DNA of 64,000 nucleotides, taken from IMG/VR virus record IMGVR_UViG_3300033984_000473, positions 62,001-126,000 of that record; one strand, written 5' to 3'. Under the pieces are notes generated by a model. It searched no databases. It was not told the origin of the DNA and was given only the letters and a program-made list of their open reading frames with translations. Below are positions 14,876 to 60,951 of this stretch, piece by piece. The stretch's first letter is position 1. Each line of letters opens with the position of its first letter. The position numbers and the translations under genes were made by a program.

Positions 14876-15003
14876 TGTAAGAGACAGGGGTCGAACCTGT
14901 ACAAGAATCAAGCGGGCTACCCCTTTATTAAGGTTTTCGGGATTATGATTATTCCCTACTTATTATGCACAACCACTGCGTTTGCCAATTTCGCCACTCG
15001 AAC
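14876..15003 (-). tRNA. tRNA-like RNA with expanded anticodon region (128 nt)
   Basis: D-arm GCGAAATTGGCAAACGC, T-arm ACAGG-TTCGACC-CCTGT, imperfect acceptor, insert with two hairpins; no assignable anticodon. Confidence 0.55.
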
Positions 15004-15076: not shown

Positions 15077-15149
15077 TGGAACCGACAGGACTCGAACCTG
15101 TGACGTACTACGATGAAGCAGCTGCTCTAACCAACTGAGCTACAGAACC
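15077..15149 (-). tRNA. atypical tRNA-Met(CAT)-like / pseudo-tRNA
   Basis: Canonical D and T arms; 6-nt loop TTCATC; two T-T mismatches in acceptor. Confidence 0.6.
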
Positions 15150-15267
15150 ATTTGTTGATGACACAGTTATAACCTAATGCTCTTCACATTCGGTGGAGTG
15201 ACTTATGTGCTCCTTTCTCATCAACAGTACAAAGGTAGGAAATATAATTGACACTACCAAATGTTTT

Positions 15268-57339: not shown

Positions 57340-57783
57340 TTAATCTAAGTTTCTTTCAACTTCTCTTTTTAAGTCTTTCTCTTTCAAACTGTTGCGTTTG
57401 TCGTATAGGTGCTTACCTTTGGCAAGACCAATTTCCACTTTAATGAATCCAGTGTTCGATAGTATAATCTCTAAAGGTACAATAGTCAAGCCTTTTTGTG
57501 AAATACTTTCACGTAATTTGATTATTTCTTTCTTCTTCATAAGAAGTTTTCTATCCCTTAGTGGTTGATGGTTATAGTATTTACCACCTTCTTTGTGTTC
57601 AGTTACGTGCATTCCTTTGATGAAGATTTCATCATTGGTAATAAAACAATAGGCTTCTACTATAGAAACCTTGCTTGATTTTATTGATTTAACCTCGGAA
57701 CCTTGTAATTGAATACCAGCTATGTGCTTTTCGAGTATAATGTATTCAAAATATGCTCGTTTGTTTTTAGTTATTGATTTCAT
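57340..57783 (-). CDS. smpB: SsrA-binding protein SmpB
   Basis: NKRAYFEY, AGIQLQGSEVKS, RKLLMKKKEI, GLTIVPL, LAKGKHLYDKR. Confidence 0.95.
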   Translation of the reverse strand: MKSITKNKRAYFEYIILEKHIAGIQLQGSEVKSIKSSKVSIVEAYCFITNDEIFIKGMHVTEHKEGGKYYNHQPLRDRKLLMKKKEIIKLRESISQKGLTIVPLEIILSNTGFIKVEIGLAKGKHLYDKRNSLKEKDLKREVERNLD

Positions 57784-58528: not shown

Positions 58529-58627
58529 TACATAGCGAGGGAATCGAACCCCCATCTCCGCAAGCGATTGGTACTGCATCTCACGATGTGCTCCCATTTC
58601 GGCACTCTACCACTGAGCTAGCTACAT
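58529..58627 (-). tRNA. tRNA-like RNA with extended anticodon arm (99 nt), G3-U70
   Basis: D-arm GCTCAGTGGTAGAGT; T-arm GGGGG-TTCGATT-CCCTC; no 7-nt anticodon loop. Confidence 0.55.
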
Positions 58628-58735
58628 ATTCGGTTATACTATATGGTGGTCTATCACCTTAGCCTTTCGCTAAAACTGTTAATGTGTGCCTCACTGGACT
58701 ACTCAACCAATGTCGCTTTAATAGTATAACCTAGA

Positions 58736-58804
58736 AACTCATACTGGATTCGAACCAGTGTCTGCGGGCTCCACGCCCCCCGTGGTTCCACTCCACTAAT
58801 GAAT
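58736..58804 (-). tRNA. atypical short tRNA (anticodon possibly TGG, uncertain)
   Basis: D stem GTGG/CCAC; T-arm ACTGG-TTCGAAT-CCAGT; irregular anticodon arm. Confidence 0.5.
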
Positions 58805-58902
58805 CAACTATCACCATGTCGCTCGGCAAAGCTAAACGTAATAGAAAGGATTATAACCGTCTGAAAGTTTGCCGACCTTCATGTTGCTATTCCCCAATTT
58901 TG

Positions 58903-59001
58903 TGCGAGAGGGTGGATTCGAACCACCGACACCTAGTCCCTAGTTGTTCCCTTGTACTTTGGGCTAAAGACCTTAGCGTTTACCAACTTCGCCACTCTCG
59001 C
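58903..59001 (-). tRNA. tRNA-Leu(TAG)-like with insertion in the anticodon loop (99 nt)
   Basis: Perfect acceptor GCGAGAG/CTCTCGC, Leu-type D-arm, TT-TAG followed by extra hairpin CCC..GGG. Confidence 0.65.
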
Positions 59002-59114
59002 AGTTTCTAGTCTTTCCCAGTGTCAACCATTGCAGTATGAAGAGTGCACATCGTCATTGCCAATTACCATAGTTTGTATACAGTGACCATAGGGCTTAAC
59101 CGTTGGATTTCTTG

Positions 59115-59188
59115 TGGAAGTAACGGGACTCTAACCCGTGTTCTCGCAGCTACAGCCGCTTTATACTATACTATTGTACTATACTCCC
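59115..59188 (-). tRNA. atypical tRNA (GTA in shortened loop; G3-U70 acceptor)
   Basis: GGGAGTA/TACTTCC-A; T-loop TTAGAGT is non-canonical. Confidence 0.5.
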
Positions 59189-59420
59189 ATTTGATTACTA
59201 CCAGCAACGAGTAACATATATCCGAATCATTAGCATCACGGAGCGTCTTTCTTTGTTACCCTACTCTCGGTGTCGCTAACGCCTCATGTCAAGTAGTAAT
59301 CTTCGTCTTTCCGAATTGTCAAGATATTTTCAGACACATTGTCCAAGACTGCTTCTCAATCAGCTAAGCACCTTATACGTCAGAGGATTACGCTTAGATT
59401 TACCTCTCGAACAGGCTTCG

Positions 59421-59624
59421 TGGTTAGAACAGGAATCGAACCTGTGTGTAATTATAGTCGCTTAGTCGACACCATTTGACTGGGACATAAGGTTTTATTA
59501 TTATTACGACTTTTATTGGGTTGATGAATGTTACACCTGTTTACACGACTTGTCCACTAACTCATCTCATCGGCAACCCATTACTTAACCTTGTTAATTA
59601 GCAATTCCATTCTGCCATCTAACC
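59421..59624 (-). ncRNA. 204-nt tRNA-like RNA with about 150-nt structured insert
   Basis: GGTTAGA/TCTAACC-A, D-arm GCAGAATGGAATTGC, T-arm ACAGG-TTCGATT-CCTGT; internal stems AAGGTT/AACCTT, TGGGTTG/CAACCCA. Confidence 0.65.
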
Positions 59625-59813
59625 ATTTGGGTGCTACCTTTAGCATCGGTCAACACACCCTCATGTTATTTTTGTTTCTGTATTAGGCTAGGAAACTCCT
59701 TTCTTTGGAAATAAGCCGTACTTTAATATGGTTTAACTTTTAACACCTCTATTTTGCAACCAGTTTCATAACTATCCAAACTGTTCTCCATAGTGGAGTA
59801 CCAAAGCGACTTG

Positions 59814-59864
59814 TGGTAAGGATGGGACTCGAACCCACAATCTCTGGCTTATGACCACCAGCGA
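59814..59864 (-). pseudogene. orphan 3' half of a tRNA-Met(CAT)-like gene
   Basis: CTGGT-GGTCATAA-GCCAG, T-arm GTGGG-TTCGAGT-CCCAT, CCTTACC-A; matching 5' strand not found. Confidence 0.5.
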
Positions 59865-60128
59865 ATACTTTTCTTTCTAATGCTAGGAACCTTGTTATCG
59901 GGTTACGTACCCCTCAAATTAAAAACTAAAATTTCAAACAAAAGAACTTCCAATCATTCTTCCTTACGAACGGTTTTGTTTAAGAACTTTTCCTCATAGC
60001 ACCATGACAATTCATGGGTATTAAAACCGCCAAACTGGGGGTTAGCTATAAGTAAAAGCCATGTGATTAATTAGGACACCATTTCTGGGATATCATTCTA
60101 CTTTCTTTCAACCACATATTTAACTTAG

Positions 60129-60294
60129 TAGATAAGGCAAGATTTGAACTTGCACCGCCAAGCTAGCCACGCTCGGATTGAGTGTTTAACGAGCTATCCC
60201 CAATTGCTCCAAGCCGTTATGTGTCTACTAATTTAAGATTCTCCCAGAACCACCACTTCTAATGAAGTCAGCTTAGCTTTTCCACCACTTATCT
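60129..60294 (-). ncRNA. 166-nt tRNA-like RNA lacking a D stem, long insert
   Basis: AGATAAG/CTTATCT-A, helix GCTAAGC/GCTTGGC, T-arm GCAAG-TTCAAAT-CTTGC. Confidence 0.6.
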
Positions 60295-60629
60295 AATTCT
60301 TGTCACCTATACAAATCGGTGAGTAGCGTACATGCACGAGAATGGAAGCATCTGCTCATCTCTTTAGGAACTTGTACTCCCTACTATTTACGGCATAGTT
60401 GCCAGTGCTACCTCTTAATTAACATACGTCATTTGTATTTGACTAATAGTGGATAGACATACCAAGTCTAATTGGTTTTGATTACACTCTCAGCCGCTAA
60501 GCTTTGTGTCACTTGCCAGACCTTACTGGCATTATTAGTGGTCCCACTATCTGTTAACCTCGAACAAAAAAAATCATCATGTGCAGAATCCCACTGCAAG
60601 TGCCAGTTCATAAACTGACTAAATTAGCG

Positions 60630-60723
60630 TGGAGAAGAGAGGATTCGAACCTCTACAAGCCGCTAAGCTATCAGCCATGACCTTCCTTGGGACTCGAACC
60701 CAACTTCCATCCAAAGCTTCTCC
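60630..60723 (-). ncRNA. 94-nt tRNA-like RNA with two T-arms
   Basis: GGAGAAG/CTTCTCC-A enclosing TTGGG-TTCGAGT-CCCAA and AGAGG-TTCGAAT-CCTCT. Confidence 0.6.
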
Positions 60724-60951
60724 AGTAATTACACATCCATCAAGATTGGGATTCCGAAGTAAGTAACTTAATCCTACCAGTTAATCATACTCAACAACCA
60801 TATTACTTCTTGTAGTAAACGCAATTTCTATACTAGCTTGCACAAAATCTAGTTATTTAACGTGCTTTATAGAATCTACTTGTTTGTCTTTCTATGCGTA
60901 ATTATAATACAAAGGTACTACCTTTTTATTTGATATGCAAGTTTTTTGCAA

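What the first reader, a model, noticed from the sequence alone, without database searches (positions are those of the whole stretch)
59421..59624. 204-nt tRNA with a ~150-nt folded insert too short for a typical group I intron
Seen: intact acceptor, D and T arms; the insert forms nested stems (TAATTA/TAATTA, AAGGTT/AACCTT, TGGGTTG/CAACCCA, GATGA/TCATC) plus 3' hairpins. No anticodon can be placed. Inference: novel tRNA-scaffolded ncRNA or minimal intron.
Basis: partly seen in the sequence, partly recalled or inferred. Interest (0 to 1): 0.6.

Follow-up and report, generated by a model that had tools for sequence, protein, structure and literature searches.

The report
Phage tRNA-like RNA carrying new pseudoknot domain
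The 204-base "tRNA with an insert" is real, but it is a phage small RNA rather than an interrupted tRNA: a tRNA-shaped handle whose anticodon arm is replaced by a conserved, pseudoknotted 130-140-base domain that recurs in at least 60 uncultivated phage contigs and matches no catalogued RNA family.

Summary
The element exists at 59421-59624, on the minus strand. It has a 7-bp acceptor stem, D and T arms, and a 6-bp stem enclosing 140 nt. No splice register gives a 7-nt anticodon loop with U33.

It is not a one-off. Orthologs lie in syntenic jumbo-phage contigs, and two motif scans plus a covariance model found 62 copies in phage contigs.

Five helices are supported by covariation (93% of cells paired against 27-48% in slid controls). 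Two of them cross, so the fold is a pseudoknot rather than nested stems.

Three results argue against an intron:
- The same domain also occurs without any tRNA, closed by a plain helix right after a normal tRNA and before a terminator.
- Alleles of the same tRNA-like gene that lack the insert carry an 8-bp stem capped by GAAA, GTAA or UUCG, not an anticodon loop.
- There is no P1/guide sequence, P6, P9 or terminal G.

It is also not a tmRNA (U3:A70, no conserved reading frame). Rfam 15 gives no family hit.

Best reading: a new phage ncRNA family displayed on a tRNA-like handle that serves processing and stability. Its function is unknown. The helix order resembles a group I intron core.

The parts
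59421..59624 (-). Whole 204-nt tRNA-like RNA gene: tRNA-shaped scaffold plus inserted domain
   Evidence: orthologs L051 4394-4593, L054 5695-5894, L065 562-763(-)
59618..59624 (-). Acceptor stem, 5' strand GGTTAGA
   Evidence: 7/7 pairs with 59422-59428. G2:C71 becomes A2:U71 in L051, L054 and L065.
59421..59428 (-). Acceptor stem, 3' strand TCTAACC, plus discriminator A (59421). No encoded CCA.
   Evidence: The discriminator is A in the window and L065 but T in L051 and L054.
59601..59615 (-). D arm GCAG-AATGGAA-TTGC
   Evidence: read directly from the sequence
59429..59445 (-). T arm ACAGG-TTCGATT-CCTGT
   Evidence: stems identical and T loop differing at one base (TTCGATT/TTCGAGT) across the orthologs
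59595..59600 (-). Closing stem (takes the place of the anticodon stem), 5' strand TAATTA
   Evidence: Pairs with 59449-59454. Orthologs have AACT/AGTT at the same place, with three pairs changed on both sides.
59449..59454 (-). Closing stem, 3' strand TAATTA
59447..59601 (-). Match to covariance model R1 of the new domain family
   Evidence: 100 bits, E about 1e-19, full model 1-150; the only copy in the window
59587..59592 (-). S1, 5' strand AAGGTT (first partner of the pseudoknot)
   Evidence: Pairs with 59489-59494 AACCTT. Each lineage has its own complementary pair. Cognate versus non-cognate test: 0 of 5000 permutations reach the observed score.
59489..59494 (-). S1, 3' strand AACCTT
59574..59580 (-). 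S2, 5' strand TGGGTTG
   Evidence: Pairs with 59517-59523. 99.6% of cells paired; 6 of 7 pairs show changes on both sides.
59517..59523 (-). S2, 3' strand CAACCCA, followed by the conserved junction ATAA(A)
59560..59565 (-). S3, 5' strand ATGAGT
   Evidence: Pairs with 59524-59529 ATTCAT. All 4 modelled pairs of this helix covary.
59524..59529 (-). S3, 3' strand ATTCAT
59536..59553 (-). Conserved apical segment ACAAGTCGTGTAAACAGG (family consensus ACAAGTcGGGTAAAcAgCcGg)
   Evidence: Most positions at least 90% conserved among 42 sequences
59506..59511 (-). S4, 5' strand AGTCGT (second partner of the pseudoknot)
   Evidence: Pairs with 59456-59461 GCGACT. 6 of 8 pairs of this helix covary in the family.
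59456..59461 (-). S4, 3' strand GCGACT
59495..59505 (-). A-rich junction AATAATAATAA between S4 5' and S1 3' (family consensus GAAAATcATAA). The window copy deviates from the consensus.
59472..59483 (-). S5 hairpin CCA-GTCAAA-TGG, preceded by the conserved TGTCC
   Evidence: 99.4% of cells paired; 3 of 4 pairs covary
59462..59471 (-). Junction TGTCGACTAA (family consensus GTGCCgACTAAC)
   Evidence: ACTAA is invariant in 42 sequences

Best explanation
This is a gene for a small stable phage RNA, not a decoding tRNA and not an interrupted one. It has two modules.

Module 1 is a well-formed tRNA-like handle (acceptor stem, D arm, T arm). I infer that it lets the host tRNA-maturation enzymes cut the RNA out of a 2.4-kb polycistronic array of tRNA-like genes and protect its ends. 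The enzymes I have in mind are RNase P at the 5' end and RNase Z or exonucleases plus the CCA-adding enzyme at the 3' end.

Module 2 sits where the anticodon arm would be. It is a conserved domain of about 130-140 nt built of five helices:
- S1 and S4 cross to form a pseudoknot.
- S2 and S3 form a stacked arm with a conserved apical segment.
- S5 is a small hairpin.
- About 57 of 153 consensus positions are at least 90% conserved, mostly in the junctions.

Shown: the domain is the functional, mobile unit, because the same domain occurs in other phages without any tRNA handle.

Inferred: it folds into a compact core that acts in trans by binding, or acting on, a host component common to many bacteria. 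That component is most probably part of the translation or tRNA apparatus. In this jumbo phage the gene sits beside a phage SmpB gene and a candidate tmRNA-like RNA that lacks a reading frame.
For: Scaffold and missing anticodon.

Orthologs with compensatory changes in the acceptor and closing stems.

Family size:
- Two exact-motif scans of IMG/VR returned 30 and 58 stretches.
- Model R1 gives 27 + 35 hits at E<=3e-9, including many sequences not used to build it.
- The pattern hits that looked like chance (L086, L101, L112, L113) get no model hit.

Structure:
- RNAalifold recovers S2-S5 on its own.
- 93.4% of cells are paired, against 27-48% in slid controls.
- Covariation score is 0.611, against at most 0.106 in slid controls.
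- 21 of 27 pairs show changes on both sides.
- Pseudoknot helix S1: 0 of 5000 permutations reach the observed score.

Free-standing copies: one starts within about a base of the end of a 72-bit tRNA (L089: tRNA 1373-1445, domain from about 1446). L119 is followed by an intrinsic terminator.

Insert-less alleles of the same gene at the same syntenic position carry an 8-bp stem capped by GAAA, GTAA or TTCG. One of these (L057) scores 49.5 bits with the Rfam tRNA model, so the handle alone is tRNA-like.

The discriminator base differs between orthologs (A or T), which argues against a conserved aminoacylation identity.

Context: SmpB (E 1.5e-52) lies 1.6 kb downstream.
Against: - No expression, processing or binding data exist. 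The maturation route and the trans-acting role are inferences.
- No protein neighbour is shared across the phage groups that would point to a partner.
- The window copy departs from the family consensus at several otherwise conserved positions (GAAAAT -> GTAATAAT, GTGCC -> GTGTC, no C after ACTAA). It scores 100 bits against 160+ for its nearest relatives, so this particular copy could be drifting.
- The fold energy is not better than shuffles.
- The family was found with exact motifs, so its true range and contexts are undersampled.
Confidence: 0.6

Rival explanations
1. It is a minimal group I-like self-splicing intron, or a ribozyme derived from one, sitting in the anticodon arm of a tRNA gene. 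S1=P3, S2=P4, S3=P5, S4=P7, S5=P8.
For: - The strand order S1-[S2-S3]-S4-S1'-S5-S4' is the same as P3-[P4-P5]-P7-P3'-P8-P7' of the group I core (the group I order is from my own knowledge).
- The location matches that of bacterial tRNA group I introns, which also need the exon anticodon stem to form (my own knowledge).
- The Rfam negative is weak evidence, because Rfam also misses the genuine T4 td and nrdB introns at its gathering threshold.
Against: - Only 2 nt separate the closing stem from S1, so there is no room for P1, an internal guide sequence or P2.
- There is no P6 and no P9.
- The base before the 3' closing strand is A or T, not a conserved G.
- The junction between S4 5' and S1 3' is 9-13 nt and conserved, against about 3 nt in the Tetrahymena group I intron (my own knowledge).
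- The one invariant G:C pair of S4 lies at the end away from where the G-binding pair of P7 lies (the P7 position is from my own knowledge).
- No splice register yields a 7-nt loop with U33.
- Insert-less alleles have tetraloops.
- Free-standing copies lie between a tRNA and a terminator.
- R1 finds nothing in the T4 introns.
Confidence: 0.06
2. It is a reduced tmRNA-type rescue RNA that works with the phage SmpB encoded next door. The tRNA-like domain enters stalled ribosomes and the pseudoknot domain stands in for the pseudoknot ring of tmRNA.
For: - The layout resembles tmRNA: a tRNA-like domain whose anticodon arm is replaced by a helix leading to a pseudoknot.
- SmpB lies 1.6 kb away.
- Related phages carry Rfam-detectable tmRNAs, one of them permuted, downstream of the same neighbouring gene.
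- An RNase R/II-like gene lies nearby in relatives.
Against: - The acceptor stem has U3:A70 instead of the G3:U70 alanine identity pair. The true tmRNAs in L001 and L042 do have G3:U70.
- The D stem is intact.
- No reading frame is conserved between orthologs; spacings differ by non-multiples of 3.
- The Rfam tmRNA model scores 10.7 bits against a threshold of 47.
- The domain occurs without any tRNA-like part in 35-60-kb phage contigs.
- A separate 74-nt RNA with G3:U70 at 59115-59188 is a better candidate partner for SmpB.
- R1 does not hit the tmRNA-bearing loci.
Confidence: 0.07
3. The whole array, this gene included, consists of tRNA-shaped decoys that soak up a host factor acting on tRNA acceptor ends or elbows, for example a defence toxin or a processing or modifying enzyme. 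The inserted domain is only one of several interchangeable fillers.
For: - Most of about 8 tRNA-like genes in 58529-60723 lack a canonical anticodon loop yet keep the acceptor, D and T arms.
- Relatives swap inserts at the same position.
Against: - A filler would not keep about 57 conserved positions and five covarying helices across distant phages.
- A filler would not persist without the tRNA part.
- No defence or anti-defence gene association was seen.
Confidence: 0.1
4. It is a decaying tRNA pseudogene disrupted by meaningless inserted DNA.
For: - There is no anticodon.
- The fold energy is no better than shuffles.
- The window copy is the most divergent of its group.
Against: - 62 model hits, with 93% pairing and compensatory changes in all five helices.
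- The arms are intact and show compensatory change in orthologs.
Confidence: 0.02

Closest known systems
tmRNA (SsrA), including reduced forms that lack a reading frame
   Same: A tRNA-like domain (acceptor and T arm) whose anticodon arm is replaced by a helix that leads into pseudoknotted RNA. This phage lineage encodes SmpB, and its relatives encode tmRNA.
   Different: No G3:U70, an intact D stem, no tag reading frame, a single large pseudoknot instead of PK1-PK4, and 10.7 bits with the Rfam tmRNA model. The domain also exists without the tRNA-like part.
Group I intron catalytic core (P3-P9), as found in bacterial tRNA anticodon loops
   Same: The helix order matches P3-[P4-P5]-P7-P3'-P8-P7', with crossing P3/P7-like helices. 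The position is in the anticodon arm of a tRNA-shaped gene.
   Different: No P1/guide sequence, P2, P6, P9 or terminal G. The junction lengths differ. No canonical tRNA results after removal. Free-standing copies are not inside any gene. At 130-140 nt it is smaller than the smallest natural group I introns I know of (about 200 nt; my own knowledge).
Phage T4 species 1 and 2 RNAs (rnaC, rnaD)
   Same: Small stable RNAs encoded within a phage tRNA cluster. rnaC ends in a T arm (CCGGG-TTCGAAT-CCCGG) and an acceptor-like stem. As far as I know, its function is unknown.
   Different: No sequence or structure relation: R1 gives no hit on the T4 locus. The interiors are different.
Engineered 'tRNA scaffold' for expressing recombinant RNAs (anticodon arm replaced by a cargo RNA)
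   Same: The same design principle: cargo is grafted on the anticodon stem of a tRNA so that cellular enzymes process and protect it (my own knowledge; papers on the method are listed).
   Different: This one is natural, and the cargo is a conserved domain of unknown function.

Membership tests
tRNA (RF00005) | Acceptor stem, D arm, T arm with T-loop consensus, G18 G19 | tested here: met
   7/7 acceptor pairs, 4-bp D stem, 5-bp T stem, T loop TTCGATT. The insert-less allele L057 scores 49.5 bits.
tRNA (RF00005) | Anticodon arm with a 7-nt loop, U33 and a readable anticodon | tested here: not met
   No register gives U33. ARAGORN -i gives no call. No Rfam tRNA hit on the element at E<=10.
Group I intron | P1 formed by the 5' exon end and an internal guide sequence, with a U.G pair at the splice site | tested here: not met
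   Only 'AC' lies between the closing stem and S1, so there is no guide segment.
Group I intron | Terminal G at the 3' end of the intron | tested here: not met
   The last base before the 3' closing strand is A in the window and T in the orthologs.
Group I intron | Core pseudoknot with the order P3-P4-P5...P7-P3'-P8-P7' | tested here: met
   The order of S1-S5, with covariation. This is a match of topology only.
Group I intron | P6 stacked on P4, and P9 after P7 | tested here: not met
   S2 3' is followed by ATAA(A) and then directly by S4. S4 3' is followed by the closing stem.
Group I intron | Excision restores a functional host gene | tested here: not met
   No canonical tRNA is possible. 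Free-standing copies lie between a tRNA and a terminator.
Group I intron | Match to Rfam Intron_gpI | tested here: inconclusive
   No hit, but the model also misses the T4 td and nrdB introns at its gathering threshold.
tmRNA (RF00023) | G3:U70 alanine identity pair | tested here: not met
   The pair here is U3:A70. L001 and L042 tmRNAs do have G3:U70.
tmRNA (RF00023) | Resume codon and tag reading frame ending in a stop codon | tested here: not met
   No frame is conserved between the window, L051, L054 and L065.
tmRNA (RF00023) | Model score at or above the gathering threshold | tested here: not met
   10.7 bits against 47.
   100 bits, E about 1e-19, model positions 1-150. All five helices form. 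Several junction positions deviate from the consensus.
T4 rnaC / rnaD | Sequence or structure homology | tested here: not met
   No R1 hit on L115.
RNase P RNA | Sequence similarity to the specificity domain (a resemblance I recalled from memory) | tested here: not met
   Local alignment to E. coli rnpB is no better than shuffles in 5 of 6 members. The one exception aligns to a different region. No Rfam hit.

The most novel reading that the evidence does not exclude
The 130-140-nt domain is a new natural ribozyme or high-affinity aptamer class. It may be derived from, or convergent with, the group I P3-P8/P4-P5 core but stripped to about two-thirds of the size of the smallest known group I intron. 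On this reading, phages deliver it on a natural tRNA scaffold to act on a host RNA, protein or metabolite.
Probability: 0.15. Interest if true: 0.9.

Novelty: new variant of a known kind. Interest (0 to 1): 0.66.

Why it matters
If the reading holds, three things follow.

- Phages use real tRNA-shaped handles to express and stabilise cargo RNAs. Biotechnologists use the same trick. This would also mean tRNA finders and annotation pipelines silently skip a class of genes.
- The cargo is a widespread, strongly constrained pseudoknotted RNA that has no match in Rfam 15 and for which I found no match in the literature. Conservation concentrated in junctions is the signature of a binding pocket or an active site, so it is a concrete candidate for a new riboregulator or ribozyme.
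- In this jumbo phage it belongs to a dense 2.4-kb array of anticodon-less tRNA-like RNAs next to SmpB. That points to an unexplored way in which large phages manipulate translation or tRNA metabolism.

Tried and rejected
- **Folding energy.** The whole gene (z -0.5) and the insert alone (z +0.4) are no better than shuffles.
- **tRNA and tmRNA finders.** ARAGORN with introns calls two other genes in the array but not this one. ARAGORN in tmRNA mode at a low threshold gives only spurious models.
- **Rfam.** Gathering and E<=10 searches on the window, and an E<=1 search on 7 loci holding the motif, gave no family hit on the domain.
- **Searches for relatives that led nowhere:**
  - 42 IMG/VR loci anchored on the neighbouring SPFH gene lack the cluster.
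  - The sigma-factor anchor gave 4 loci without tRNA-like genes.
  - The phosphoesterase anchor in IMG/VR found only the source contig.
  - Exact 20-24-mers found only the source contig.
  - blastn against GenBank phages gave nothing.
- **What worked.** Phosphoesterase homologs and their contigs, a T-arm/acceptor pattern in metagenomes, and two conserved-motif patterns in IMG/VR.
- **Bacterial genomes.** The genome-contig scan gave only 2 chance hits.
- **tmRNA reading.** Rejected: no G3:U70 and no conserved frame.
- **Resemblances recalled from memory.** Similarity to RNase P RNA and to the 16S decoding-centre sequences was tested against E. coli rnpB and rRNAs and is no better than shuffles.
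- **T4 RNAs.** No relation to T4 rnaC/rnaD or to the T4 group I introns.
- **Protein neighbours.** None is conserved across the phage groups.
- **Spurious hairpin.** The small hairpin that RNAalifold placed inside the conserved apical segment is not supported (73% paired).
- **Literature.** No paper holds the conserved sequence strings. The supplements of the 10,006-motif phage RNA catalogue are not held, so I could not check whether the motif is listed there.

Full report
**What is at the coordinates.** The feature reads 5'->3' on the minus strand, from 59624 to 59421, and is 204 nt long.
- It has a 7-bp acceptor stem (GGTTAGA/TCTAACC) with discriminator A.
- It has U8, a D arm (GCAG-AATGGAA-TTGC) and a textbook T arm (ACAGG-TTCGATT-CCTGT).
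- Where the anticodon arm should be, a 6-bp stem (TAATTA/TAATTA) encloses 140 nt.
- No way of joining the flanks gives a 7-nt loop with U33.
- ARAGORN with introns allowed does not call it. The Rfam tRNA model does not reach it even at E<=10.
- Folding energy alone is unremarkable (z = -0.5).

**Setting.** The window is part of IMGVR_UViG_3300033984_000473, a 232,931-bp phage contig of about 33% G+C. The gene lies in a 2.4-kb stretch without ORFs (58529-60723, minus strand). On one side is an SPFH/Band-7 gene. On the other are a metallophosphoesterase, a full-length SmpB (Pfam E 1.5e-52) and a sigma factor. The stretch is an array of about eight tRNA-shaped genes, most of which lack a canonical anticodon loop.

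**Relatives of the gene.**
- Forty-two IMG/VR loci anchored on the SPFH gene do not carry the array, although three of the 11 that were scanned with Rfam carry recognisable tmRNAs there.
- Contigs found through homologs of the phosphoesterase do carry a syntenic array.
- L051, L054 and L065 hold 200-202-nt orthologs. Their T-arm stems are the same and the T loop differs at one base. Their acceptor stem has changed compensatorily (G2:C71 -> A2:U71). Their closing stem has changed on both sides at three pairs.
- The discriminator base is A in two orthologs and T in two. That argues against a conserved aminoacylation identity.
- At the same syntenic position, L057 and L058 have a 76-nt gene with the same acceptor and T arms but no insert. 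Similar 76-nt genes occur in L062/L064 and L060/L076 (the L060/L076 acceptor pairing is imperfect).
- In those genes the 'anticodon arm' is an 8-bp stem capped by TTCG, GAAA or GTAA. Swapping stable tetraloops is what a purely structural hairpin does. An anticodon loop does not behave that way.

The host gene is therefore an anticodon-less tRNA-like RNA, not a tRNA waiting to be spliced.

**The insert is a family.**
- Blocks conserved between the orthologs were turned into an exact pattern. It matched 30 stretches in IMG/VR but only two obvious chance sites in 185,579 species-representative genomes.
- A covariance model (R1) was built from nine sequences with the RNAalifold consensus.
- R1 finds 27 copies at E<=3e-13. 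These include 18 that were not in the seed, at 72-92 bits. The chance pattern hits score nothing.
- A second pattern from a different part of the domain added 35 more copies at E<=3e-9.
- The window holds exactly one copy (59447-59601, 100 bits).

The copies occur in three contexts:
- inside tRNA-like scaffolds, several of which share a Leu/Tyr-type D arm (GGCGGAAT.GGTAGACGC);
- free-standing, closed by a 9-10-bp helix that begins within about a base of the 3' end of a normal tRNA and is followed by a terminator-like hairpin (35-60-kb contigs; in L089 the tRNA is 1373-1445 and the element starts at about 1446);
- free-standing with other closing helices, in one case (L119) followed by a clean intrinsic terminator.

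None lies inside a protein-coding gene.

**Structure.** Per-sequence helix tables and pair counts on model-aligned sequences (41 distinct rows) give:
- 93.4% of cells paired, against 27-48% when partners are slid by 1-3 columns;
- a covariation score of 0.611, against at most 0.106 in the slid controls;
- 21 of 27 pairs with changes on both sides.

S2, S3, S4 and S5 are each 90-100% paired. Even the first pair of S2 switches from U:A to C:G in 12 sequences. S1 cannot be put into a covariance model because it crosses S4. In 13 lineages the cognate strands pair better than non-cognate combinations, and 0 of 5000 permutations reach the observed score.

The strand order is: closing stem - S1 - [S2 - S3 - conserved apex - S3' - S2'] - S4 - A-rich junction - S1' - S5 hairpin - GTGCCgACTAAC - S4' - closing stem.

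Fifty-seven of 153 consensus positions are at least 90% conserved, mostly in the junctions.

The GTCG/CGAC hairpin is replaced by the long-range S4 pairing.

**What it is not.**

*Not an intron.*
- There is no guide sequence or P1; only 2 nt separate the closing stem from S1.
- There is no P2, P6 or P9, and no terminal G.
- No functional product would result from excision.
- There are copies with nothing to splice.
- R1 does not hit the T4 td or nrdB introns.
- The Rfam negative for group I counts for little, because Rfam also misses those genuine T4 introns.
- The helix order is the same as the group I core (P3-[P4-P5]-P7-P3'-P8-P7'). I report this as a resemblance of topology, not as membership.

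*Not a tmRNA.*
- It has U3:A70 rather than G3:U70, an intact D stem and no conserved reading frame.
- It scores 10.7 bits against a threshold of 47.
- The domain exists without a tRNA-like part.

*Other resemblances.* Similarities to RNase P RNA and to 16S rRNA that I recalled from memory were tested and are no better than shuffles. T4 rnaC, a stable RNA with a T arm in the T4 tRNA cluster, is the nearest analogue in concept but is unrelated in sequence.

**How it most likely works.**

Shown:
- a modular gene;
- a conserved pseudoknotted domain that is the transferable unit;
- a tRNA-like handle that is dispensable in other phages.

Inferred:
- The handle recruits RNase P, RNase Z and the CCA-adding enzyme, so that the RNA is cut out of the polycistronic array and its ends are protected. 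Free-standing copies instead rely on the upstream tRNA and a terminator.
- The domain folds into a compact core and acts in trans on a broadly conserved host component. Conservation in junctions rather than in helices suggests a binding pocket or an active site.
- The neighbourhood of SmpB, a candidate tmRNA-like RNA without a reading frame, and an RNase R-like gene in relatives makes the translation and tRNA apparatus the most likely target in this phage. No protein neighbour is shared across the other phages, so this last step is the weakest.

**Novelty and caveats.**
- There is no Rfam 15 family and no hit to GenBank phages by blastn. No paper holds the conserved sequence strings.
- I could not check the published catalogue of about 10,000 phage RNA motifs, because its supplements are not held.
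- The family was sampled with exact motifs, so its range is underestimated.
- The window copy departs from the consensus at several conserved positions and may be a drifting member.
- I rate this a new variant of a known kind: a tRNA-like stable RNA of a phage tRNA cluster, with a tmRNA-like layout.
- I give about a 15% chance that the domain is a new ribozyme or aptamer class.

Noticed in passing
window 57340-57783 (-): The phage encodes a full-length SmpB (Pfam PF01668, E 1.5e-52), the protein partner of tmRNA. It is conserved in the syntenic relatives L050, L051, L053-L058.
   Followed up: yes
window 59115-59188 (-): A 74-nt tRNA-like gene with G3:U70 and A73 (the alanine identity elements). 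It has a 5-bp stem with a UGUA tetraloop instead of an anticodon arm. Orthologs (L054 6055-6131, L057 6408-6484) hit the Rfam tmRNA model at 22 bits. It is a candidate tmRNA without a reading frame and a likely partner of the phage SmpB. A similar form in mycobacteriophage DS6A is reported in PMC11915505.
   Followed up: partly
window 58529-60723 (-): A dense array of tRNA-shaped genes, most without a canonical anticodon loop: 58529-58627 (99 nt, with a conserved 28-nt insert holding a GTGA-capped hairpin), 58735-58805 (Pro-TGG but with G33), 58903-59001 (99 nt, Leu-type D arm, 99% identical to L054), about 59814-59967 (about 155 nt), 60129-60294 (166 nt), and 60630-60723 (94 nt, Ser-CGA-like loop, short D region, very long variable region).
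   Followed up: partly
window 60123-60627 and 59607-59977 (-): Long non-coding blocks conserved at 70-78% with L051, L054 and L057. They include about 350 nt upstream of the 166-nt tRNA-like gene and the spacer just upstream of the 204-nt gene (with a covarying hairpin GGGTG...CACCC versus GGGGT...GCCCC). There is no Rfam hit, so these may be further unknown ncRNAs.
   Followed up: partly
window 15077-15149 (-) and about 14940-15000 (-): A 48-bit tRNA whose anticodon loop has only 6 nt (TTCATC; ARAGORN reports a 2-base 'anticodon'). It is followed by another Leu-type tRNA 5' half with an odd interior.
   Followed up: no
L057 5403-5478, L058 5574-5649, L062 and L064 (76 nt), L060/L076: 76-nt tRNA-like genes without the insert; L057/L058 sit at the syntenic position, L062/L064 and L060/L076 are similar genes elsewhere (L060/L076 with a mismatched acceptor 5' strand). 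The anticodon arm is replaced by an 8-bp stem capped by TTCG, GAAA or GTAA, a swap between classic stable tetraloops.
   Followed up: yes
L001 7330-7663, L042 7973-8305, L037 8496-8760: Related jumbo phages carry Rfam-detectable tmRNA genes (permuted in L037) just downstream of the SPFH gene. They are followed by long tRNA-like genes (L042 8324-8434, L037 8367-8488), whereas an apparently related gene with the same acceptor 5' strand in L027/L028 is 71 nt.
   Followed up: partly
L053 350-2329, L054 1-500, L056 262-2193: Syntenic relatives encode an RNase R/II-like protein (RNB, S1, CSD domains) a few kb upstream of SmpB. This suggests a phage-borne module related to trans-translation.
   Followed up: no
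window 60905-60925 and 15225-15240 (-): The motif TACCTTTGTA(T/C) precedes both the ncRNA array and the tRNA at 15149, and it is conserved upstream of the array in L051. It may be a phage-specific promoter element.
   Followed up: no
L118 6517-6686 and 13 identical-scoring loci; L142, L126, L147: Variants of the domain family. One is a 170-nt form with an extra hairpin in the S3 arm. Others have the S2 first pair changed from U:A to C:G (ACGG...CCGATAA).
   Followed up: partly
L091 1710-2801 (-): An adenylosuccinate-synthetase-like ORF (Pfam E 2.6e-44) lies directly upstream of a tRNA-embedded copy of the domain. Phage homologs of this enzyme can mark 2-aminoadenine (Z-base) genomes (my own knowledge).
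   Followed up: no
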